Assembly: GCA_977030845.1 (NCBI GenBank)
Contig: OZ365112.1
Coordinates: 20,336,001-20,400,000, forward strand
DNA length: 64,000 nucleotides
Reading direction: 5' to 3'
DNA from: Fimbriosthenelais zetlandica
Taxonomy: Eukaryota
A program made the position numbers and the translations under genes. A model generated the notes under the pieces. That model had not been told where the DNA came from. It did not search any database and worked only from the letters and a program-made list of their open reading frames with translations. This document shows positions 6,062 to 18,658 of this stretch, one piece after another (the stretch's first letter is position 1; each line of letters begins with the position of its first letter).

Positions 6062-9000
6062 TCACTGCCCCGTCAGTAACACTCGACATTGCTCGTTGTT
6101 GGGTTTTGGGAGTGGATAGGAAACGCCTGGTGACTTGGTCAGACGCCGTATACTCGACTTGTATCTGGTCCTCATGCCACTGGCTTTCTCATATTTAGTG
6201 ACATTATGTCTGCAAAAGAAATAGATATTTTTTTATTCTTGAACAGGCCTACATGTAAATCACATCCATGATTGCTCCATGAATGAATGAAATGAAAGTT
6301 ATATGAATGATATTCCCTATACACTAAATGCAACTCAGCTGCAAGTGTATTTCATTCAGCAGTAAGAACATTGGTATACTTTGGAAAGTGAGAGACGGGG
6401 TTAATAAATGAGGCTTTTAATCCATGTCTGGAGCAAGTCTATGGCGTGAGATTTATAAGAAGCAGGTCACTTGGATGGTGGCATTCTTGACGTTCCTCCT
6501 GCTGCTCCCTCCTTCCCACCTTAGTTTCTCATTCACTGGAGGAGCCACTCTCTATAGAGCTGGTGAGGTCAGGGTCAGCATGGTGATAACTCGGCCATGG
6601 GTCAGGGCAATCTTTCTGGTACGTGTAACATGGGTATAAAGGAGAGTGACAGCCGCAGGAATAGGTTAGCTACATCTTACAGCCACCTGCTATGACCCAT
6701 CCCAATATTTAGATGAAAGTTTAAGTATATCTTGCTTTTCATAATGAATCGGTATAAAAGGTTATTTTGGAAGTCGCTTATGATTTATGTGTGGAACGGG
6801 TAAGAGATCTTGGAGGACTTTTATTGTATTTAGATTTAGATTTGTTGGGTTTGTGGATTCCAAGTACAGTACATGGGTAGGGAGGCTAGGTGAGGGTTGA
6901 GTAGGGAGGTTAGAGAGATGGGGTGAAGGGTGACCTGGCCTAGTGCATGGTATAAAGGGTCGCGTGCCCAGACATGACGAGTGGTTGACCTGGTAAAGTC
7001 TCCACTTTCTGAAGGCACTGAGAAGACTTGCAACTGTCCAACAAGTAAATCTACCAGAAAGGTCGGAATGATCTGGTTATGGAGATACGATTTTAGGGAA
7101 GTCAATATTTACCATATGTTAGCAATATGGGAGGTCGTTTCATATAGGGAAAAGGTGGGCTAATGACTGCTTGTGCTGATAGAGTAATGGAAGCCAGATG
7201 GCTGTAGGGGTTTATGATGCACATTATACCACCCCAAGACCCAACCCCTTCCGAACATGGCTACAGTTGGTGAAAGTCCACCCACGCCATATGAATTAGA
7301 TTCTTGGATATCAGAACTATGTGTTGGTTAGAGGAAGTAAAATTATTTGATGTAGTCAGCATTAACGATAATCTTGTTGAGGCAAGCGAGATATTGGTGT
7401 ATAACAATCTGCTCGGTGAACATGAGATGTGTGGATACATTGTGCATGTTTTGCCAATGACAAGCCTGTTTTTACATTTACATACATCAACCCTATCTCG
7501 GGCAGTTTAATGGTGGTAAGATTAAAACCGGTCGTAAAGGTATAGAGGGCATGCAGGGTGATGGTATCTAGCTATACTATATGGTATATCTAACAAGTAA
7601 AAATAACTCAACCTGGAAAAATGTAGGCTACATCAGAGTTCATTATACTATAGACTCTGTTTCATATCATATGGGTCTTCTGAATGTATGGTATGTATTA
7701 TGTCGTAGCCTATTGAAAATTGAAGTAAACTGTATATTTGAGAGCTTCTTGTCTGTCAATGTAGCCATTATAAATACCATGAGCAGCTCAGATATACCTC
7801 AGAGAAATTCTAATCTAAGGATATACTGAAGAGGCCTGGCAAAGTGAGCAGATCAGGGAAGATGTGAAATAATGGTGCCAGGCACGACCCCTGACCCTAC
7901 AACCAGACTTTAAGTTATTCTGTGGTTGGGTTAAATATATGGGAAGAAGCTTCTAAAGATGGAGGATTTTCTATTTCTTTCATTTGCCCGCCTTTCTCTA
8001 CAAATAATTTCCACATTGGGTTGTGGATTTTTTAAAAAGGGATACTATGGTATTGCCTCCGAAAGATGTATAGTGGTAAAATGGATCCTGAATCCTTGCT
8101 GTTTTTCTCCCGCTGTGTTTAGCCCATGCTGAAGCTGAGTCAGGTATATTATATAGAGGTGTAGTATTTAGCACTGAGCCTAAACAATTCATTCTCTCAC
8201 CACCCCCGCAGACACTTTCATCCTGTGTGTTACAGCCTGTACAGGTACAGAACTGTAGATCATCTTTGCTCAGTCAGACTGTCTTACATGCTAACTTTAG
8301 AACAAAAAATGTGCATATATTTCTACGTTGATAAACTCACTGTGTGTGGAATTCTCCACTAACTTATTATCTCATAATTTTTTCTCCCAATATTTATATA
8401 TCAGATAATATAAAACTACAATTGTTGTATACTTAGAAGAGTCAATGTTTTGTGCTAGAACTATGAGAGGTAACGTTAGGTGGGTATATTCTGTAAGGGA
8501 CAGCATATCAGTGTCTGGAAACAGGTCTACGTGGCCATAGATGGGCGTGGCCGACCTGCTCCAACTGGGTGAAATATTGGAGCTGCTCAGGCTTCATTTA
8601 CATACCAGACCACGCCCCTTAGAATAGACACTTCCTCCTAGCTCAAGGCTGCACTCTGGTGGTTTACATGATCTATGAATCCCTGGTGTTACTCACCTAA
8701 ACTGTAGGTCTGGTCTGCTCATTTGTAGGCACATCTTGATTTTGTCATAAAAGTCCACATCAGTGACAAAATCTATAACTGAAGTGGAGTCAGTCGTATA
8801 CTGGACACCTGTCCGGAATACTCCCGTTTGTATACCAAAGCTCCCATGAATAACTAGAGCCCCACTGAAACAAATGAGAAATAGAGCAAATTGTATTTGG
8901 TTACCTGGATGTTCCCAGATCATGTGAAATTTAATTTGGTTGATGGCAAGGGCTTGTAAACTGTTGACAATCCAGGATAAATATGCTCACCTGTTTTTAA

Positions 9001-12000
9001 TGAGAGAGTGACAATTTTTATTCCACAAACTAATAGAAACTTGTCCTGATAAATCAAGGGATACAGCTCCCTGTATATTCAAGTTAGCCGAGAGACCATT
9101 CTGGAAATGAATCACTTGAAAGTGGTCCTGTAGCAGGAAATTTGTCTGCAATGTTAAAAAAAAACTGAATGAATTGATCATCAAACACAGATATGACAGC
9201 CAAAGAATTATTGACCATTGCCTAGCAGTGCTTGCGCCTACCCACTACCCACTAACGTTCCTATTTTGTGAGCTATCTCACTTATATCTTATGTCGTTTC
9301 GTGGGTAAATCTGTCATATAAAAACTATAATTCATTCATGTTTTACCCGTAAAGCATTGGTGAGCTCGCTTGGAGCATTCCACACCGCTGACATAAGACC
9401 ACTTTGTCCTACAAAGAAGGTGACCGGACGAAGTGCAACATCCAGCAGGTCCAAAGCCAGACCTGCTGTAGGATCTACCTCCTCTTGTCCTGCCTCCACC
9501 TCCTCTCCTAATAATCCCTCTATACCAGCAGCAAAGATACCAAACTAGAAATAGAAAAAGTATTAATAACAATATTAATGATTCCTTCATTAAAAATTAA
9601 TCTACAATTAGAGTAGGGACTCCCTTTAAATGACAGGATTACCTTTTTATACAATTTGTGTTATTATAAATGAACTTACAGCATACATAGGCATGGAAGA
9701 CGTTGGGGTGATAAGGTCCACGTCCATACCGCTCCTCTTCATAATTCCTGCCTTAGAGTTCTGCACATACATGTCATAAGTAGCTGTAAGACCATGTGTC
9801 TCTGCGAGAGAAAAAGATAAACTTCATCACATGCATGATGTCACCCAAGCAAGGGTCTAATTGTATACTATATCAGGCCTGCATCCTCCAATACCCCTGG
9901 CATCGAGCAAACCTAGGTCAATATATCAGACCTGTGTCCTCCAATACCCCTGGCATCGAGCAAACCTAGGTCAATATATGAGGCCTGTGTCCTCCAATAC
10001 CCCTGGCATCGAGCAAACCTAGGTCAATATATCAGACCTGTGTCCTCCAATACCCCGGGGCATCGAGCAAAACTAGGTCAATATATCAGGCCTGTGTCCT
10101 ATGACCCTGTGAGTACTTATGTAGGCTACGACGTCTATAAAGCTGCATATTACCTGCTAAACTTTCCTTAAAAGCCAAAGCTTTGCCTTTAGGTGCCAAG
10201 ACATGATAATTCCTCAGTTTTTCATCCTGAAGAGCCTTCTTCACTTTCTTGCTGTCGAAAACAAATGTACCATATATTATGGAGGATAGGCCTATATATA
10301 TCATAGTACTAAATTACTTTATCATGTAAATATAGTCCATATATCTCAAAATGTTATGAGATGAAAATAGTGCATACATGTTTTACGAAGAGAAAGGAAT
10401 TGAAAAGTTGTGGCTCACCTAATATCCTCATCTCGGGATGCCATTAAGAATAACCTTTGTTGGATGTACATGGAGTGTTCTGTCTGGTCTGGATCTGTAG
10501 TGGACTCTACAATGTCCTTGATATCTTCCTCTGTAGGTGAATTATTCACGAGAACCATGAGGGCTTGGTTCCGAACAGCACTGTCATAAGCTTTCTTATA
10601 TTGGTGGTAGATATTGCGCATTGCTGTCTTCACCTAAAGAAAGTTACATTCAAGCTTAGTGCTATACTTATGCATGATCCGATGGCCATAACCATTAAAA
10701 TATGGTCCATTATTCTCTTTAATACTATTAATAAATTTTAAAAGCAATTAGTATTAAAAGTGTATAATGAATGAAGGGTAGATTACCTCTGGGGTGAGAG
10801 ACTGTTGAGGTAGTCTACGTAGAGCCTTGATGGCTGCTGAGTTAACTGAAGCATCAGTACCATGTTCAGCGTATTTAATGAGGGTTGGTAGCGTGTCGGC
10901 GAGACCGGCATTCCCTAACATCCTCAGGTGTTGTGACCGACAACTGTTTTCTGTACATGCTTCTAATCTCTCCAAGATCAATTTCTTAGCTTCCACTATC
11001 AACTAATTAATGAATAAGAATTTGTTCAGTAATCTGGGTAAAAGTTTTTATCTACATCGTACTTCGATCACTTTTTCACTCGTTGAATCTTTTTTGTAAT
11101 GTCAGTTATTGGCCTTGCATACTGTGTCAAGTTTACATGTGATAAGTAAAATTATATTTTGCTGACAATCAAGCACAATATGTTGCTTAATTACCATTAC
11201 ATGTGTGATTCAGCTTACCTCATCTTGACCCACTCTTTGGCTATAGGTGTACATGATTGCACCCAAAGAATCTCCTATAGATTCATGTAGTGTACTGCTC
11301 TTAATATCACTCTTGAAAAGTTTCTATGAAAAGAAAATCAGAAGAAACATCCCTTACTTTCAAAATGAAGGGTTATGGACTACATGTATATAGATTATAT
11401 AGACTGTAGAACTGAATATAGTTTGAAATTGAATGAAATATTGACTTACTAGGATGTCTGTAAGTAAGGACTTCTGTGGGTGTGTACAGAATGCAACAGC
11501 CAGTAGGTAACGCTCCTGAAGCTGGAAATCATACTCTTCATTAAAGTCAAGGAATCCAATGATAGCTGCTTGTCCGGCACTGGTTTGTGCTGCGACTATA
11601 GCATCAACTAGCTGTGGTCTGCAATGCAAATAAAAGGCATCAACATTGCAAAAGATATAGGACAGGTCGAGGATGCTACAATGCTCTTTGATTAATAATG
11701 ATAATATTATTTTGTTACTCACATGATATCTGTATAGTCAGCATCTTTTAAGATGGCAGATATGCTCGTTTGGCTGGAGAATCGTAGAGCAGCCACCAGT
11801 GTGAGGAAGGCACCACCGCCATGTGTGCTGGACACAGCCTCATTTTTGAGTGAAGGCCTCAGTTCTTCTACAAGTTTTACCAGCTTCAAAAACAGAAATA
11901 TAGTTATTAACAGTGGACCTGGATGATATTAATTATGGACCTTTATTATTGGACATGCTAATCAGTAGATATACCATTATAATTGGAAAACCTTACCTTA

Positions 12001-14296
12001 TCACAGTTTTCTACATCACACTGTTGTTCATCTTGACTTAAAGCCAATGTGGAGCCTTGTAGTTTTAATTTCTCTCCTGGAAAAGCAAACAGAAACACTT
12101 TCATGAGCCTAAATCCCCTTTATGCAAAGACAATAACTTGCAGTTGACACTATTATTTCTCTCATGTAGGTATACCTAAGATTAAACCAATTGACTCACT
12201 TGCATTAATAATCTGTGCAGCCTCTTCCAATGAGGACGCTTGCACGGCTGTGCTGCCCAGTTCCTTCTTTTCCAAAATCAGAGATTGCCTGTTACAAGAA
12301 ATTTGATATTATTATTTCATGACAGGCGCCTTGATGAATACTAGCCAGTGCAAAAAAACATATGTTATTACTTACGTGGAAAAGGCTTTAACTGCTAAAG
12401 ATTCTCTCATATTTAACCTCCCAATGTGCTGCTCTTCTGATATGACACTCTGGATGACGTCATCTGAGGAGAGTGTGTATTTAGTATGTACAGATGATGT
12501 CACACTGACGTCAAGTACTTCTCTTACATTAGAGAACTGGTTGAGGTTAGATGTAGGTTTACATCCAGTTTTGGTCTTTATGATTTTGAGTCCGTCAACT
12601 GAATAGTTGACATCACATTCCCCACTGGCGTCAACCTAGCAATATTGAATGAGTGAATGAATTCATTATAAATATACATTAAAACCATGACATATGATAT
12701 ACATTATTATACATATTGCCTATCATTTCTCTCACCTCTGTTTTCGTGTCTGTTTGTCGCAGTATTTGGAGCAGACTTAATATGCCTTTTTTCATATTAA
12801 CGCTCCAGACAGGGTCCGCTTCTGAAGCATACACCTGTTTTATTGAACTACCAACCCAACTGGCCAGCACAGGGTAGCTGCTCAAACTGGATAACTTAGT
12901 GGATTTGGTTGAACGTGACACACTGTGTAACTTAGGATTAGATATCTGAAAAGCAGAACAAACAGTTAAAGGGTGTTAGAGTGTCACTTATCTAGAGTAC
13001 AAGGCAGTGCCGTACGATACGTGTCACAATTAAATATCCTTTTTACCATAATTATACCATATATCTAAGCAAAAGGATTGGTCCATATTCTTACCAATAA
13101 CTTAACAAGCATTTGGCTGCCTTTTGTGTAGATAGGGACGAGTGAGACATCACAAGCTAATTTAAAGCCCACGTCCATCTTGGCTTTGGATGACGTGGTG
13201 ACGTCAGGCTCGTTGAATCTGATGTCGGTAACATATTTGTATCTGTACGTATGACCAGGAGGAAGTTGAAGTGTGAGACCTGAAACAGGAAAACCTTCAC
13301 CTGTAAGATAGTAAGAAGCCAGTGTCAGCTAGCACATTATACCAATGCAATGAGGCAGCCTTAATAATTATAGTACTAACACCGGGCCCAAAACCTAAAT
13401 GACACATCACCATTAATCCGAAAACGATACATTGAATCGCCTTGTTGAAATATCAGCGAGCGCTCGTTGGACTGCTCGTAGAATTTTCTCTACGATTTTA
13501 TTTTCTACGAGAGGTGGCCTGTGAGTGCTCGCTGAAGTTATGCAACAAGGGGCTTAATTATAGCCTTAGTAACTGATATGGCGTAAAGCCACTATTCACT
13601 CAATTCACTCATTCCTAATGAACACAAATCTGATTCCCAAAAGAGGAACATTTTCTTTTCAATTAATATACCATGTTGATGAACATATAATATTTATATA
13701 TGGGATAATCGCTTTGATAATGGTACGTCTATATGGCATAAATGAAATTCCTATAGAGGTCAAAGCTTTATCAGGTCCGTCTAATCTATGTACATGTACA
13801 TGTACTATCTCTGATATAGAAGCTTTACGTGTCAGATCATTAGTGGACCTATATATCCTTATATACGATCTCTTTATACATTAGTATTCCTAGCCCTCTA
13901 AATTATACTTGGGGGTTCATCAATAAAGTATGTCTAGAATTAAACAAATAATTTAGTATTCGTAGAATACTACTATAGGAATAAATTAATGTACGTGATC
14001 GTCGTGCATTTCAGTGATTGCTGTGATTTCCTTTAGATAAACTTCCACTTCCGTGCCAGCCAATATGCTAGAAATATTCTCACATTAAACCTGTTTATAT
14101 AATCACTGTGACATCAATACCCGTATATATATATGTTTAAGCGTCAGCTGTTCATCTATATACATCAGTTTCTCATCTAATAACTAGCAAAGCTCCAATA
14201 CACTCGGCAATAGAATCTTAAATAAGTTCAAATAAATGAATTATACTTACTCAGTTTGATAAATGTGATGAGAATTAATCCTAAGTGGATATACAT
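6062..14296 (-). CDS. MTTP: Microsomal triglyceride transfer protein large subunit (LLTP family), complete, 17 coding exons, 881 aa
   Basis: Minus-strand exons: 14296-14251, 13300-13095, 12945-12736, 12635-12376, 12288-12200, 12076-11997, 11883-11723, 11618-11450, 11323-11219, 11002-10787, 10633-10419, 10251-10154, 9801-9680, 9544-9347, 9145-8991, 8864-8697, 6209-6062. All introns are GT-AG with matching phases; total 2646 nt. Signal peptide MYIHLGLILITFIKLSEG. MTP-typical blocks: EVDASGECDVNY, PQLVDAIVAAQT, LQERYLLAVAFCTHP, IVEAKKLIL, DVALRPVTFFVG, LDLSGQVSISLW, KMCLQM and terminal NEQCRVLL. Confidence 0.96.
6830..8200 (-). mobile_element. Highly decayed non-LTR retrotransposon (LINE RT) remnants in the last MTTP intron
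   Basis: TIVSLFKKSTTQCGNYL (about 8052-8001) resembles the RT-proximal IvPlfKKGD..C.NYR motif. LKSYLHNQ (about 7096-7073) resembles KSYL..R.Q. Many stops and frameshifts. Confidence 0.45.
9870..10100. repeat. Minisatellite, about 4.3 copies of a 53-bp unit, in an MTTP intron
   Basis: Unit atcagacctgtgtcctccaatacccctggcatcgagcaaacctaggtcaatat. The cctcc anchor lies at 9885, 9938, 9991 and 10044; the last unit is 54 bp. Confidence 0.95.
13440..13550. mobile_element. MITE-like foldback element in MTTP intron 1
   Basis: Imperfect terminal inverted repeats ccttgttg-aaata-tcagcgagcgctc and gagtgctcgctga-agttatg-caacaagg, with a nested internal IR ctcgtagaa...ttctacgag. Confidence 0.65.
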
Positions 14297-14459
14297 GGCT
14301 GGACTGTGTTGTGAGAGAATGAAGGAGAGGGAGCAAGAGCTTCGTCAAAACTTCACCATTTAGAAGGGAGGGGTGTAGGTAGCCCAATCCCAGTCCTTCA
14401 CTCTTTGTCCTCTTCTCCAGGCCTCTGACCTCGATCAATGTCCAAAATACAGTATAAGC

Positions 14460-14680
14460 TGGCGTACAAAGTCCTATCTCCCTCACTGTATGAATTAATG
14501 TGCACCACAATGTCAATCTTCCCTGTATGCAATATTGTTATCTTTGAGATAAAGGCCAGTGCATTGTTCAAGTATGAAATAGTGCAGAGTTAGATAATTC
14601 TCCTATCACCCTGGGTCTGTAGGGGCACCGGTATATATAAAGCACAGTGACGATCCTGGCTTATCACTTGTGACTTTCAG
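14460..14680 (-). promoter_or_regulatory. Candidate MTTP proximal promoter (HNF4 and GATA sites)
   Basis: CAAAGTCC at 14467-14474; WGATAR sites at 14538, 14547, 14592 and 14661; TATA-like TATATATAA at 14632-14640; 170-380 bp upstream of the ATG. Confidence 0.45.
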
Positions 14681-15794
14681 TCATAATCCTGCCCCCTATA
14701 AGGGGGATGCATACATTGATATCAAAGTAACTTAACATTGTAGGCTGGAGCAGATGTGAGCTCTTCCAGAAAATGTATTGCTGATACTCTGGAAAGTTCT
14801 AGTGTTCTACAAAAGCTCTATAGCTATCTCCCCTTTTGTCAAGAATCGACCTATAATGGGTAAAATCACAGATTCAGTTCCCAGTTATTATAGTTTGACT
14901 TTCCATAATGTTTCAGTAAATCCTACATGAGATCGTTTGTACTGCATGTTTTGTTCCGACCTATTTCTCAGCGTGTGTTGAGTTATGGTGCGTACACGTC
15001 ATCCTGTGATATTTGACATTATAATTTATATCTACTCAAATATAAATACCAGAAAAAATATATGAATCATTTAAACATTAAATATGATTGTGAAATGTAC
15101 TTGTGTATCCTTGATTAAGTAGTACAAGAGGGCAGTCCGAGGTAGCTACGACATGTTCAAAGGACAATGCTGGAACCTGGGGATATGCAAAACTACATTT
15201 CCTTTCACTCAGCATCATGTGATGATCGTCCTCTCGATCTGTGACCCCAAAACTGGTGCACCCGTGTCCTGGATTCTAAGAATGGGAACCTCGGGAGAAC
15301 TGGCAAAACAACATGACAATAGCTATAGTTATGGTGCACTCTGCAAATTTTTTGAATTTTTTTTTTATGCTTTGTAGCCTATCAAGGTTACTCTATCTAA
15401 ATGAGACATACCACAAACAATCGGATCCATGTGCACCAGGAATATATTACAACAATTCCTAAAATAACAGACTTTAAAAGTATATTTCAATCCAGAAATT
15501 TGGATGTAAGACATCATGAAATCGGGGAGAAAAGTGTGATAGCCTCCAAGAAAAAAAAATGAACGTGTATGTGTACAAAGCTAATCGAAAGTCTGTCATT
15601 GGGGAAAATTGACTTACAGTAGGCCTACTGGGTCGAACCGTCTAGCCTAGACTCTATGTAACCATCGTGGTTTTATGAGAAGATCCTTGATAACAATAGC
15701 AAAGACTACTTAAATAAAACCATGGGGACTGTATAATTATAAATATGGGCTCCAATAGTAAATAGCTAGCCTCTAAGCTCAGTTTGAATCAGTG

Positions 15795-15960
15795 ACAGGT
15801 GCCCCCTCCCGCTGTCACAATAACACTGCCACGCCCCCACCACGTGTTCACACTAACCGGATGTTGACATCACGTGGTTAGATGGGATGCCGTGTTGTGG
15901 AGCAGCTTTCTACATAAGCGGGAAGTTTTCATTGAAATTTGGTAGGAAAAATTCGAGTTT
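15795..15960 (+). promoter_or_regulatory. Candidate TRMT10A (possibly bidirectional) promoter
   Basis: GC-richer island with GCCACGCCCC (KLF/SP, 15828), two CACGTG E-boxes (15841, 15871) and CCGGATGT (ETS, 15857). The coding exon begins at an acceptor (16504), so a non-coding first exon is implied upstream. Confidence 0.55.
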
Positions 15961-16506
15961 CATTAATTTAGTTATCAAAAGACGAACAAGTAATATGTGT
16001 AGGATATTTAGGGAGCTTCTTGGTGGTAATTATGCATGAAACATAGCTGTTAACGGAGAAAGTAGACCTGTAGGTTCCCTTCAACCTTGTACTTCGATGT
16101 GGGGTGTTGGAAGAGGAGGGTGAAATAAATGGCTAATTCCTCGTAGAAATCTTGTCCCCAGTGTGCTTTGATATGCATATTTGTACAGTGAGCAGAGGCA
16201 TAGTGTCATAAATACCGTCTTATGTGGTTAGTTACCTCTAATTCCTTCCAAATACATGTACATTCTCAAAACCCCCGATTATCGCTCACCAATGGCCATG
16301 GCCACATGCCTCATGCATGGCCATGCCCATGAGTCATGACCACCTATATGGCTATATGACCTTCTATGGGCATGACATTAAGCATGTATGTTAGCTATGG
16401 TCATTACTCCTTGAGTGTGTACGTATATTTTGTTTGTTGTATGACTGTTACTTGTTTCTGGAACAATTTCTTGAACTTCAACTGCGGTTTATTTTATCTT
16501 CAGAAT

Positions 16507-18658
16507 ATGGAATCGGACGGAAATGAAACCAGCCAAAATAACAAAGATCAAAATGTGGGTGCAAATGCCGAACACGAACCACAAAATGATGATACTTCTA
16601 GTTCTACTCAAGTCAATTCCATTAGTCCAACAAAGATAATTGAAGCGTCCCCAGGAATGTCGAAAAATCAAATGAAAAAAATGTTAAAAAATCAACGATG
16701 GATGGAAACGAAGGCAGCTAGGAGGTAATGACATAAATAATTATTATTTTATTTAGCATCATTTATATGTCATCTTTGATCATTGACATTGTCTTTTTTT
16801 CTAGTTCATCAGGGTAATTATCTTTACTTATCTTCAAAATATAATTCATATCTAGAGCACATGAAAAACAGAAGAAGAAGGAAAAGCGTAAGGCGTTAAA
16901 AGAGAGTGGGGCCCAGTTACCCCCGAATCGTAAAGTATTGAAGCGAAACTGTATGAAGGACTCCTCCTGTACCACGATGATTGCGATAGATTGCTCCTTT
17001 GATGACTTGATGGGCGAAAAGGTCAGTTTTTTATAATTATATAATACTGGGTGATTATCTCTTTATTTTTGTAAAGAAGAGGTTTATAAATATTCGTCAT
17101 TTAAATTTTCTAAGCGAAGATAGGTTGAAATTATTTTGTTTTTCTTTAAGGATATCAACAAAGTAGTTAAACAATTGAACTACTGTTACGCTTCTAATCG
17201 ACGCATGGTGGATCCCGCACAGGTAAATAATGAAACTAATTTGACAATTTGTCTAATATGTTTTAATCAATCTAGACCATTAAAACTTTCTTTCTATCCC
17301 CATGAAATAAAATCAGTGGTAATTCGGCATTTCGCTATAAAGGTTCATATTTCTAATTAGAAATGTAAAAAGAAAATGTTTTATTTATTGTAACAGTTTT
17401 ACATCACCAGCTTCAGCAGTAAGACAAAATGTCGCATGGAGGAGATCGGAGATTATAAAGGCTGGGATGTAGGTATCATGATCTCATAAAATACACTTAG
17501 TTTTCTTCATTAATTCATAGTTGGCTATTTTGCTTTAAATTTTCGGTATTTTCCTATTTACTCTCACCATTAAACGCAAACGATGATTTCTTTGTGTAGG
17601 TATATTTCAAGGCTGAAGATTATGTGGAGGTTTTCGGGAAGGATAAAATTGTCTATCTTACAAGTGACTCACCTAACGTCTTGGCCCAACTGGAAGATGA
17701 TAAAGCGTACATTATTGGTGGTTTGGTCGATCATAACCATCAAAAGGTAAGGTATTCCTCTTCCTATTCCCTTCCAATGCATTTTCTCACTCCCCACTCA
17801 ATCAGTAGCTCAGTATCTATTCACCAAATCAGCCACCTCCCATATTCTCACCCATATGTATACCATTGTATACTTAAGTTTATTTCTTAATTGACTCTTT
17901 TCTTTTTTGTTAAATATGTTTGCTTTAAGATTTTACTTTAAATTGTGATATTTTGTTTATAGGGCTTGTGTCACAGACTGGCCTTGGAGAAGGGGATTGC
18001 TCATGCTCAGCTACCTATAGGAGATTACCTCGCGCTAAACTCCCGTAAAGTTCTCACTATCAACCACGGTAAGTGACTGTTATAAGTTTTATTTTCATAT
18101 TAGACATTAAGAAACTTATATTAGACATTAAGAAACTTATTTTCATGTTAGACATTAAGATAATATAGATATAAGGCTTTAAAGTCCGGTGCCACCTTAT
18201 GGCACTGGCCCCCAGTAGCTAGCGCCATTTCCATTCTTAGCGATTTTCACTGGGTTTGATTTTAAATGGTGCACCGTTGTTTCCATCCAGTGTTTGAGAT
18301 ACTCCTGGAATTCACAGCGAGTCGGAGTTGGGAGGACGCCTTTTACAAAGTCATCCCATGTCGCAAAGTGGAGCATTTCAAAAACGCGAACAAAACGTCT
18401 ACCGATGCTACCGACAAAAATCCAGCGGACGATAAGAATGATGCTGTATTGAAAGACGAGCGAAAAACAGACAAATCTGTAGAGGACCTCAGTCACTTGA
18501 GTGATAAATCATCTAATGACGAAGACTTAGAAATACCTCTTAAAATAGTAATGCCTGTTTCCGGCAGTGCCCCACCTCAACAAGAAGCGAGTTTAACGCA
18601 ACAACACCAGGTGGCAGCACAGTCGTTAGATATGCCTCAACAACAGCAACACCCATGA
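16507..18658 (+). CDS. TRMT10A: tRNA (guanine-N1, position 9) methyltransferase, TRMT10A-type SPOUT enzyme, 7 coding exons, 382 aa
   Basis: Exons 16507-16724, 16856-17021, 17151-17222, 17397-17468, 17600-17746, 17963-18068, 18291-18658; phases consistent; 1149 nt. Motifs MSKNQMKK, IAIDCSFDDLM, KQLNYCYASNRR, IVYLTSDSPNVL, YIIGGLVDHNHQKG, LPIGDYL, SRKVLTINHVFEILL and WEDAFYKVIPCRK. The IDCSFDDLM and SRKVLTINHVF blocks are cytosolic TRMT10A-like. Confidence 0.95.
18090..18161. repeat. Short tandem duplication (3 copies) in TRMT10A intron 6
   Basis: ttagacattaaga begins at 18100, 18121 and 18148. Confidence 0.85.

What the first reader, a model, noticed from the sequence alone, without database searches (positions are those of the whole stretch)
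14296..16507. MTTP and TRMT10A are head-to-head, as in human: a probable ancient microsyntenic pair
Seen: the two ATGs diverge 2.2 kb apart. Established: human MTTP and TRMT10A are immediately adjacent and divergently transcribed at 4q23. Inference: the pairing of a gut lipid-export gene with a housekeeping tRNA methyltransferase predates vertebrates and may be held by shared or interdigitated promoter elements.
Basis: partly seen in the sequence, partly recalled or inferred. Interest (0 to 1): 0.7.

Follow-up and report, generated by a model that had tools for sequence, protein, structure and literature searches.

The report
Ancient head-to-head MTTP–TRMT10A gene pair
A lipid-transfer gene (MTTP) and a tRNA methyltransferase gene (TRMT10A type) sit back to back here as they do in vertebrates, a hemichordate and four spiralian phyla, so the pairing dates back at least to the bilaterian ancestor; it is a solid but ordinary example of conserved gene neighbourhood.

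Summary
MTTP starts at ATG 14296 on the minus strand. A seven-exon Trm10-family gene of the TRMT10A type starts at ATG 16507 on the plus strand. The two start codons are 2,210 bp apart, and no gene, Rfam RNA family, tRNA or repeat was detected between them.

The same divergent pair, with no gene called in between, occurs in six of eleven other animal genomes that could be read:
- Present: bowfin, a hemichordate, a brachiopod, a scallop, a nemertean and a tubeworm (ATG-to-ATG 594-5,191 bp).
- Absent within 10 kb: two echinoderms, a bee, a scorpion and an octocoral.

The pair therefore predates vertebrates and was most likely present in the bilaterian ancestor, with later losses.

Nothing found supports a single shared promoter. 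The MTTP side is CpG-poor. A TGGACTTTG motif, the reverse complement of the HNF4-specific site CAAAGTCCA, lies 67-191 bp upstream of the MTTP ATG in six of seven syntenic species. The TRMT10A side has a CpG-richer patch with two E-boxes about 650 bp upstream of its ATG, and probably a 5'UTR intron.

No RNA data were available, so transcription starts are inferred. TRMT10C is excluded. TRMT10B could not be tested by a tree.

The parts
14251..14296 (-). MTTP coding exon 1: ATG at 14296, a hydrophobic signal-peptide-like N-terminus (MYIHLGLILITFIKL), and a phase-1 GTAAGT donor
   Evidence: Sequence. One search shows it is the best hydrophobic ATG exon upstream of exon 2, and its phase fits the exon 2 acceptor at 13300.
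8696..13300 (-). MTTP exon 2 onwards, as homology-supported exon cores (for example 13086-13292, 12733-12966, 12375-12635, 11396-11638, 10784-11002, 10418-10633, 9335-9544, 8990-9157, 8696-8866). The 3' end and stop codon were not modelled.
   Evidence: Pfam Vitellogenin_N and MTP_lip_bd. PDB best hits are human MTTP 6i7s/8eoj. Exon-by-exon collinearity with the MTTP genes of Lingula, Pecten, Lineus, Glandiceps and Amia. It is the only MTP_lip_bd locus found in the genome.
14297..16506 (.). Intergenic region between the two start codons (2,210 bp). It holds both 5'UTRs and both promoters.
   Evidence: Unique in the genome. No Rfam family, tRNA or notable repeat. Overall CpG o/e 0.46, with an uneven profile.
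14467..14475 (-). HNF4-type motif: AGGACTTTG on the MTTP strand (CAAAGTCCT on the + strand), 179 nt upstream of the MTTP ATG
   Evidence: An unbiased 9-mer search of the MTTP-proximal 250 bp in 7 syntenic species gives TGGACTTTG as the top consensus, present in 6 of 7. Only 2 of 200 shuffles reach that coverage. About 0.21 species would be expected from the local background. The motif is the reverse complement of the HNF4-specific site CAAAGTCCA (PMC3384313).
14632..14641 (.). TATA-like run (TATATATAAA) within the CpG-poor MTTP side. It is readable on either strand and its use is unknown.
   Evidence: CpG o/e is 0.14-0.28 over 14200-14900.
15841..15876 (+). Cluster of two E-boxes (CACGTG at 15841-15846 and 15871-15876) flanking an ETS-like CCGGATGT (15857-15864). 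It lies inside the richest CpG patch of the intergenic region (15800-15999) and is the putative TRMT10A promoter.
   Evidence: Motif scan. CpG profile: 9 CpG, o/e 0.91. The function is inferred, with no RNA data.
16488..16503 (+). Polypyrimidine tract plus AG (tttattttatcttcag) ending 3 nt before the TRMT10A ATG. It is a probable 3' splice site of a 5'UTR intron.
   Evidence: Sequence. This is an inference only.
16507..18658 (+). TRMT10A-type Trm10 gene, 7 coding exons: 16507-16724, 16856-17021, 17151-17222, 17397-17468, 17600-17746, 17963-18068, 18291-18658 (382 aa, stop TGA)
   Evidence: Open frame with GT-AG at every intron. PF01746 on exon 5. Human TRMT10A (4fmw) is the best PDB match for exons 5 and 6. 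52-59% identity over about 240-270 aa to the best-matching spiralian proteins, several of which NCBI names tRNA methyltransferase 10 homolog A. Exon collinearity with orthologues.

Best explanation
This is an intact, single-copy MTTP gene and an intact TRMT10A-type tRNA m1G9 methyltransferase gene in divergent (5'-5') orientation. Their start codons are 2.2 kb apart. The arrangement is orthologous to the vertebrate MTTP-TRMT10A pair. It was inherited from at least the last common ancestor of deuterostomes and spiralians, that is, the bilaterian (nephrozoan) ancestor.

The pair has been kept in vertebrates, hemichordates, brachiopods, molluscs, nemerteans, annelids and this genome. It has been broken, or stretched beyond 10 kb, in echinoderms, arthropods and an octocoral.

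The intergenic region looks like two back-to-back promoter modules rather than one shared promoter (inferred):
- A CpG-poor MTTP-proximal module carrying a conserved, strand-fixed HNF4-type site.
- A CpG-richer module with E-boxes and an ETS-like site about 650 bp upstream of the TRMT10A ATG, followed by a 5'UTR intron.

The most likely reason for retention is that the compact divergent promoter region, and possibly enhancers lying in the neighbour gene, leaves little room for a harmless breakpoint. That last step is not shown.
For: Gene identities.

Synteny. The look-up of encoding contigs with 10-kb flanks shows an 880-900-aa protein carrying PF01347 and PF19444 divergent from the TRM10A gene, with no gene called in between. 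This holds in Lingula (ATG-ATG 594 bp), Pecten (716 bp), Lineus (1,040 bp), Glandiceps (840 bp), Amia (2,124 bp) and Ridgeia (5,191 bp). The gene ranges are CDS ranges: one search shows both genes start with ATG at the reported ends in the five loci it checked, Ridgeia not among them.

Six-frame comparison shows collinear MTTP and TRMT10A exons between the window and five of these loci; Ridgeia was fetched later and not compared.

Human coordinates abut or overlap at the 5' ends, and mouse Mttp and Trmt10a are listed as neighbours.

Promoter anatomy: CpG profile, motif positions, the conserved TGGACTTTG motif, and its match to the published HNF4-specific motif. The vertebrate MTTP promoter is known to be driven through a DR1 element by HNF4alpha and HNF1alpha (statement in PMC5504083).
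Against: - Five of eleven readable genomes lack MTTP within 10 kb of TRMT10A. The pair is dispensable, and the single cnidarian sampled does not push its origin before Bilateria.
- No RNA or CAGE data could be found, so TSS positions, the 5'UTR intron and the two-module model are inferred from sequence.
- No element shared by both genes was detected, so selective constraint is unproven.
- Only 12 genomes were sampled, one or two per phylum.
- Amphioxus and tunicates were not tested.
- TRMT10A versus TRMT10B orthology rests on best matches, a motif and position, not on a tree.
Confidence: 0.85

Rival explanations
1. Neutral persistence. The pair is ancestral but not under selection. It survives in slowly rearranging genomes simply because a sub-kilobase to 2-kb intergenic gap is a small target for breakpoints.
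For: - The pair is lost in several lineages without obvious cost.
- No motif is shared by both genes.
- The two gene functions are unrelated.
- A third neighbour, SPATIAL, is kept in four invertebrate phyla but has drifted about 390 kb away here and is not the neighbour in Amia. That is what gradual neutral decay would look like.
Against: - Orientation and tight spacing are kept in six phylum-level lineages (plus this unidentified genome) over more than 500 My, while most neighbour pairs are scrambled (PMC3514665).
- Irimia et al. report that 5'-5' pairs are enriched among conserved pairs, have shorter intergenic distances and are better coexpressed than controls.
Confidence: 0.3
2. One truly shared bidirectional promoter co-regulates both genes.
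For: - ATG-to-ATG distances of only 594-1,040 bp in Lingula, Pecten, Glandiceps and Lineus.
- The human gene models overlap at their 5' ends.
Against: - In this genome the CpG and E-box patch and the HNF4-type site are about 1.4 kb apart.
- The conserved motif is MTTP-proximal and strand-fixed.
- Nothing is conserved on the TRMT10A side.
- By established knowledge, MTTP is tissue-restricted and TRMT10A is broadly expressed in vertebrates.
Confidence: 0.12
3. The methyltransferase is a TRMT10B or TRMT10C orthologue, so the resemblance to the human pair is superficial.
For: No TRMT10B sequence could be obtained, so no A/B/C tree was built. The TRMT10A-only tree is poorly resolved.
Against: - Exon 5 scores 59 bits against human TRMT10A and 39 bits against TRMT10C. 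Exon 6 hits TRMT10A and yeast Trm10 only.
- The genome has a separate locus on contig 19 whose best match is TRMT10C.
- All 120 best database matches of the syntenic Lingula and amphioxus orthologues carry PF27710 (TRM10_TRM10A). Where they are named, they are TRMT10A or Trm10, never B or C.
- The GGLVDHNH motif is identical to human TRMT10A.
- The vertebrate gene at this position (Amia) is TRMT10A.
Confidence: 0.04
4. Convergence: the two genes became neighbours independently in different lineages.
For: None found.
Against: The same two unrelated single-copy genes, in the same 5'-5' orientation with no intervening gene, occur in seven genomes representing six identified phyla (the window's own phylum is unresolved). 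Chance adjacency of a given pair is of the order of 1 in 10,000 per genome.
Confidence: 0.01

Closest known systems
Vertebrate MTTP-TRMT10A divergent pair (human 4q23, mouse chr3, bowfin)
   Same: The same two orthologous genes in the same 5'-5' orientation, with no gene between them. The Amia ATG-to-ATG spacing (2,124 bp) is almost the same as here (2,210 bp).
   Different: This genome is a non-vertebrate, and its best TRMT10A matches are spiralian at up to 59% identity. The downstream neighbour differs: SPATA6-like in Amia, SPATIAL in other invertebrates, neither adjacent here.
Conserved ancestral microsyntenic pairs (CAMPs) of Irimia et al. 2012 (PMC3514665), for example HSPE1-HSPD1
   Same: Non-paralogous neighbours conserved in four or more major metazoan lineages, with conserved 5'-5' orientation and a short intergenic distance. 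This is the commonest class of CAMP.
   Different: HSPE1-HSPD1 and similar pairs are functionally linked and strongly coexpressed, whereas MTTP and TRMT10A have unrelated functions. Whether this pair is among the 595 published CAMPs could not be checked, because the supplement is not held.
Vertebrate MTTP proximal promoter with an HNF4alpha/HNF1alpha-responsive DR1 element
   Same: An HNF4-type site (CAAAGTCC[A/T/C] or CAAAGTTCA) lies within 200 bp upstream of the MTTP start codon, in one orientation, in six of seven syntenic species including this one. It matches the published HNF4-specific motif.
   Different: Binding was not tested. No HNF1 consensus was found in the invertebrate regions. 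The distance to the TSS is unknown.

Membership tests
MTTP (microsomal triglyceride transfer protein large subunit) | N-terminal lipoprotein beta-barrel/helical region (Pfam Vitellogenin_N, PF01347) | tested here: met
   The exon at 12682-12975 scores E 3.7e-10. Weaker hits on two further exons fall in the expected order.
MTTP (microsomal triglyceride transfer protein large subunit) | MTP-specific lipid-binding domain (PF19444 MTP_lip_bd), which separates MTTP from vitellogenin and apoB-type relatives | tested here: met
   Three consecutive exons hit profile positions 75-136, 140-190 and 190-246. Human MTTP is the only significant PDB match. It is the only such locus in the genome.
MTTP (microsomal triglyceride transfer protein large subunit) | Complete open reading frame of about 880-900 aa with a signal peptide | tested here: inconclusive
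   Exon 1 has a hydrophobic N-terminus and a phase-compatible splice to exon 2. Exon cores are collinear with orthologues down to 8696. The full CDS and stop codon were not assembled, because no full-length MTTP reference could be passed to the tools.
TRMT10A (Trm10 family, tRNA m1G9 methyltransferase) | Trm10-type SPOUT methyltransferase domain (PF01746) | tested here: met
   Exon 5 scores E 2.5e-11, 44 bits against a cut-off of 27.3.
TRMT10A (Trm10 family, tRNA m1G9 methyltransferase) | Closer to TRMT10A/yeast Trm10 than to TRMT10C | tested here: met
   Exon 5: 4fmw (TRMT10A) 59 bits against TRMT10C 39 bits. Exon 6 matches 4fmw and S. pombe Trm10 only. A separate TRMT10C-like gene lies on contig 19.
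TRMT10A (Trm10 family, tRNA m1G9 methyltransferase) | Falls with TRMT10A rather than TRMT10B in a phylogeny | not tested
   No TRMT10B sequence was obtainable by reference. Indirect support comes from the all-TRMT10A best matches of syntenic orthologues, the GGLVDHNH motif and positional orthology with Amia TRMT10A.
TRMT10A (Trm10 family, tRNA m1G9 methyltransferase) | m1G9 methyltransferase activity on cytosolic tRNAs | not testable with these tools
   This needs biochemistry.
Conserved ancestral microsyntenic pair (CAMP, Irimia et al. 2012) | Non-paralogous neighbours conserved in at least four major metazoan lineages | tested here: met
   The pair is present in Vertebrata, Hemichordata, Brachiopoda, Mollusca, Nemertea and Annelida, and in this genome.
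Conserved ancestral microsyntenic pair (CAMP, Irimia et al. 2012) | Conserved relative orientation | tested here: met
   The orientation is 5'-5' in all seven genomes, with no gene called in between.
Bidirectional promoter (two TSSs less than 1 kb apart on opposite strands) | Distance between transcription start sites under 1 kb | not testable with these tools
   No RNA run was listed for this DNA. ATG-to-ATG is 2,210 bp here, and the putative promoter modules are about 1.3-1.4 kb apart. In Lingula, Pecten and Glandiceps, ATG-to-ATG is already under 1 kb.

The most novel reading that the evidence does not exclude
The MTTP-TRMT10A intergenic region carries an HNF4-to-MTTP regulatory link that has been kept, in the same place and orientation, since the bilaterian ancestor. 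The pair is then held together because gut or liver-type MTTP control elements and the TRMT10A promoter or gene body are physically entangled. This would be a regulatory-block type of constraint between a tissue-specific lipid gene and a housekeeping tRNA-modification gene, neither of which is a developmental regulator.
Probability: 0.25. Interest if true: 0.55.

Novelty: new member of a known kind. Interest (0 to 1): 0.35.

Why it matters
The finding adds a well-documented case to the class of ancient 5'-5' microsyntenic pairs. It gives a positional-orthology anchor for both MTTP and TRMT10A across Bilateria, which helps in annotating large lipid transfer proteins and Trm10 paralogues in new invertebrate genomes.

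The conserved HNF4-type site next to MTTP suggests that HNF4 control of lipoprotein assembly is as old as the gene pair. It also offers a compact region of 0.6-2.2 kb for reporter tests of how a tissue-specific and a housekeeping promoter coexist back to back.

[quoted passage not shown] Regulatory cross-talk between them would therefore be of practical interest.

The class itself is well known, and the pair may already be in published lists.

Tried and rejected
- **RNA evidence.** The look-up of sequencing runs was busy once and then listed no run for 13500-17500 or for the TRMT10A gene. Read laying was therefore not used, and TSSs and UTRs remain inferred.
- **Spliced proteins.** They could not be handed to the search tools, because there is no reference for them and long letters must not be typed. 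All family and PDB searches were done exon by exon. The full MTTP CDS was not assembled.
- **TRMT10B.**
  - Two homologue searches, with Lingula and amphioxus queries, returned only TRMT10A-type proteins.
  - An Atlas search leaving out PF27710 gave no usable hit.
  - No A/B/C tree was possible.
- **TRMT10A-only tree.** It is poorly resolved. It places the window protein nearest Lingula without support, so the host phylum is not settled beyond 'spiralian-like best matches'.
- **Published lists.** The Irimia 2012 supplementary pair list is not held. Full-text searches for MTTP with TRMT10A or RG9MTD2, and for TRMT10A with 'bidirectional', found only GWAS or locus lists and no description of the pair as conserved synteny.
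- **Whole-intergenic motif comparison.**
  - Shared exact k-mers are at most weakly above shuffles.
  - A panel of known motifs (NRF1, YY1, Sp1, CRE, HNF1, FOXA, GATA, CDX) shows nothing consistent.
  - The TRMT10A-proximal 250 bp has no motif above shuffles.
- **Bacterial-type promoter and terminator scan.** It is not applicable to a eukaryote and was ignored.
- **Owenia fusiformis.** The look-up came back withheld, with no DNA. It counts neither for nor against.

Full report
**What is in the sequence**

The window is eukaryotic: 36-44% GC, with GT-AG introns throughout.

On the plus strand, ATG 16507 opens a seven-exon gene: 16507-16724, 16856-17021, 17151-17222, 17397-17468, 17600-17746, 17963-18068 and 18291-18658. 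Every intron is GT-AG, and the exons join into an uninterrupted 382-codon frame. The N-terminus (MESDGNE...) has the same short acidic start as the orthologues (MDGDHS, MDLSKE, MDSNDQ, MEVGDT, MSSEDA). The in-frame ATGs at 16366 and 16372 are therefore unlikely to be used.

On the minus strand, ATG 14296 opens a 46-nt exon encoding a hydrophobic, signal-peptide-like MYIHLGLILITFIKL. It ends at a GTAAGT donor in phase 1. The exon 2 acceptor at 13300 needs exactly that phase.

**Identity of the two genes**

*MTTP (minus strand).*
- Its exons hit Vitellogenin_N and, over three consecutive exons in the right order, the MTTP-specific MTP_lip_bd domain.
- Human MTTP (6i7s, 8eoj) is the best match for one tested exon and the only match for the other among solved structures.
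- This is the only MTP_lip_bd locus found in the 447-Mb genome.
- The 3' end below 8696 was not modelled.

*TRMT10A type (plus strand).*
- Exon 5 hits the Trm10 SPOUT family PF01746.
- Exon 5 aligns over its full 49 residues with human TRMT10A (4fmw) at 59 bits, against 39 bits for TRMT10C.
- Exon 6 matches TRMT10A and fission-yeast Trm10 only.
- The assembled model is 52-59% identical over about 240-270 aa to the best-matching brachiopod, mollusc and annelid proteins. NCBI names the Lingula and Haliotis ones tRNA methyltransferase 10 homolog A; the others carry generic or no names.
- The genome has one other Trm10-family locus, on contig 19. Its best structural-database match is TRMT10C, the mitochondrial RNase P protein 1.

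TRMT10C is therefore excluded for the window gene.

TRMT10B could not be tested by a tree, because no TRMT10B sequence could be brought in by reference. The indirect evidence is against it:
- All 120 best matches of the syntenic Lingula and amphioxus orthologues carry PF27710 (TRM10_TRM10A). Those with a family name are TRMT10A or Trm10.
- The GGLVDHNH motif is the human TRMT10A one.
- The vertebrate gene at this position is TRMT10A.

**The synteny test**

I took TRMT10A orthologues from other animals and fetched their genomic surroundings with 10-kb flanks. The gene ranges returned are coding ranges from ATG to stop (checked for five of the loci).

An 880-900-aa protein carrying Vitellogenin_N and MTP_lip_bd lies divergently upstream, with no gene called in between, in six genomes:

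| Species | Group | ATG-to-ATG (bp) |
|---|---|---|
| Lingula anatina | brachiopod | 594 |
| Pecten maximus | bivalve | 716 |
| Lineus longissimus | nemertean | 1,040 |
| Glandiceps talaboti | hemichordate | 840 |
| Amia ocellicauda | bowfin, vertebrate control | 2,124 |
| Ridgeia piscesae | annelid | 5,191 |

A six-frame comparison shows collinear exons of both genes between the window and five of these loci; Ridgeia was fetched afterwards and not compared.

For human, a published gene table gives hg19 TRMT10A 100,467,866-100,485,189 and MTTP 100,484,918-100,545,156. The two models therefore meet at their 5' ends. Mouse Mttp and Trmt10a are listed as neighbours.

No MTTP lies within 10 kb in five genomes:

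| Species | Group |
|---|---|
| Xenia | octocoral |
| Bombus | bee |
| Diadema | sea urchin |
| Amphiura | brittle star |
| Centruroides | scorpion |

The six-frame comparison also finds no uncalled MTTP exons in the four of those flanks that were checked.

By parsimony, the pair was present in the common ancestor of deuterostomes and spiralians. It was then lost, or stretched beyond 10 kb, in echinoderms and arthropods. The one cnidarian sampled gives no support for an older origin.

Independent assembly of the same oriented pair in six phyla is not credible.

**Anatomy of the intergenic region**

The 2,210 bp occur once in the genome and hold no Rfam family, tRNA or notable repeat. The CpG profile is uneven:
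- CpG o/e is 0.14-0.28 over 14200-14900, next to MTTP.
- There is a local peak of 9 CpG (o/e 0.91) at 15800-15999.

That peak holds two CACGTG E-boxes (15841, 15871) and an ETS-like CCGGATGT (15857). A strong polypyrimidine-AG acceptor ends 3 nt before the TRMT10A ATG. I infer that TRMT10A starts transcription near 15.85-15.95 kb and has a 5'UTR intron.

On the MTTP side, I searched without a prior motif for the 9-mer consensus (one mismatch allowed) found in the most species. The search covered the 250 bp upstream of the MTTP ATG in the seven syntenic species. It returned a single top word, TGGACTTTG, present in six of seven.
- Only 2 of 200 dinucleotide shuffles reached that coverage, and none matched the number of high-coverage words.
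- The sites lie at -67 to -191, all on the MTTP strand, where the local background predicts about 0.2 species. There are none in the rest of those six intergenic regions.
- TGGACTTTG is the reverse complement of CAAAGTCCA, the HNF4-specific binding motif defined by Fang et al. 2012 (PMC3384313).
- The vertebrate MTTP promoter is known to be activated through a DR1 element by HNF4alpha and HNF1alpha (as stated in PMC5504083).
- The window copy is at 14467-14475.

Nothing comparable is conserved on the TRMT10A side. Whole-region k-mer sharing is at best marginal.

**How it most likely works**

- *Shown:* two intact orthologous genes in an arrangement inherited from the bilaterian ancestor.
- *Inferred:* the region consists of two back-to-back promoter modules, about 1.3-1.4 kb apart in this genome and necessarily much closer in Lingula, Pecten, Glandiceps and Lineus. 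It is not one shared promoter. MTTP is probably driven by an HNF4-type nuclear receptor from a proximal, CpG-poor promoter. TRMT10A is probably driven from a CpG-richer promoter of the E-box/ETS housekeeping type.
- *Why the pair persists is not shown.* The leading idea is that the compact divergent promoter region, perhaps with enhancers of one gene inside the other, leaves few harmless breakpoints. The main rival is neutral persistence of a small target in slowly rearranging genomes. The repeated losses, and the decay of the third neighbour (below), make that a serious alternative.

**Comparison with what is known**

The class is well known. Irimia et al. 2012 described 595 conserved ancestral microsyntenic pairs. 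Most are 5'-5', with short intergenic distances and conserved orientation. This pair meets their criteria.

I could not check whether it is on their list. I found no paper that describes MTTP-TRMT10A as conserved synteny. I therefore rate it a new member of a known kind, with modest interest.

The HNF4-type site is the most interesting by-product. It is a testable lead, not a demonstrated binding site.

**Limits**

- No RNA data were available.
- Only one or two genomes per phylum were sampled, with a 10-kb horizon.
- Amphioxus and tunicates were not tested.
- There is no TRMT10B tree.
- The MTTP 3' end was not modelled.
- The host organism was not identified beyond spiralian-like best matches.

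Noticed in passing
L003:16708-23768, L006:14161-22134, L008:20866-25373, L018:22390-25151; own genome contig 13 at 20741780-20744040 (about 390 kb beyond the window's TRMT10A): A SPATIAL-domain gene (PF15256, TBATA-like) lies convergently downstream of TRMT10A in Lingula, Lineus, Glandiceps and Ridgeia. The ancestral block was therefore probably MTTP<->TRMT10A-><-SPATIAL. In this genome SPATIAL is on the same chromosome but about 390 kb away. In Amia the downstream neighbour is a SPATA6-like gene instead.
   Followed up: partly
own genome contig 19, 11005124-11008327 (L002): This is the genome's second Trm10-family gene. It has a coiled-coil-rich N-terminal exon, and its best PDB match is TRMT10C/MRPP1, so it is the likely mitochondrial RNase P methyltransferase subunit. 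No third (TRMT10B-like) locus was found by the PF01746 scan, but that scan gives lower bounds only.
   Followed up: partly
window 16366-16506: The TRMT10A frame stays open upstream of ATG 16507, with in-frame ATGs at 16366 and 16372. The stretch is hydrophobic and pyrimidine-rich and ends in a strong splice acceptor. It looks like intron or UTR rather than coding sequence, but an automatic gene caller could extend the protein by 47 residues.
   Followed up: partly
human 4q23, from the tables of PMC12083599: Several GTEx eQTL variants assigned to TRMT10A lie inside the MTTP gene body (for example hg19 chr4:100525515 and 100541636). This is compatible with regulatory overlap between the two genes in human, but equally with linkage disequilibrium.
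   Followed up: no
P0254 (Muraenolepis orangiensis, 463 aa): This database protein carries both SPATA6 (PF14909) and TRM10A domains. It is probably a gene-model fusion of TRMT10A with its downstream neighbour, the same neighbour seen in Amia.
   Followed up: no
L018:4810-10000 (Ridgeia piscesae): Ridgeia is the only syntenic species without the TGGACTTTG-type site in the 250 bp upstream of the MTTP ATG. It has two sense-strand copies further up in its unusually long (5.2 kb) intergenic region, which suggests a 5'UTR intron or a shifted promoter there.
   Followed up: no
(Owenia fusiformis TRMT10A, P0150): The contig look-up for Owenia was returned as withheld with no DNA, although the window protein is only about 52% identical to the Owenia protein. 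The reason is unknown.
   Followed up: no
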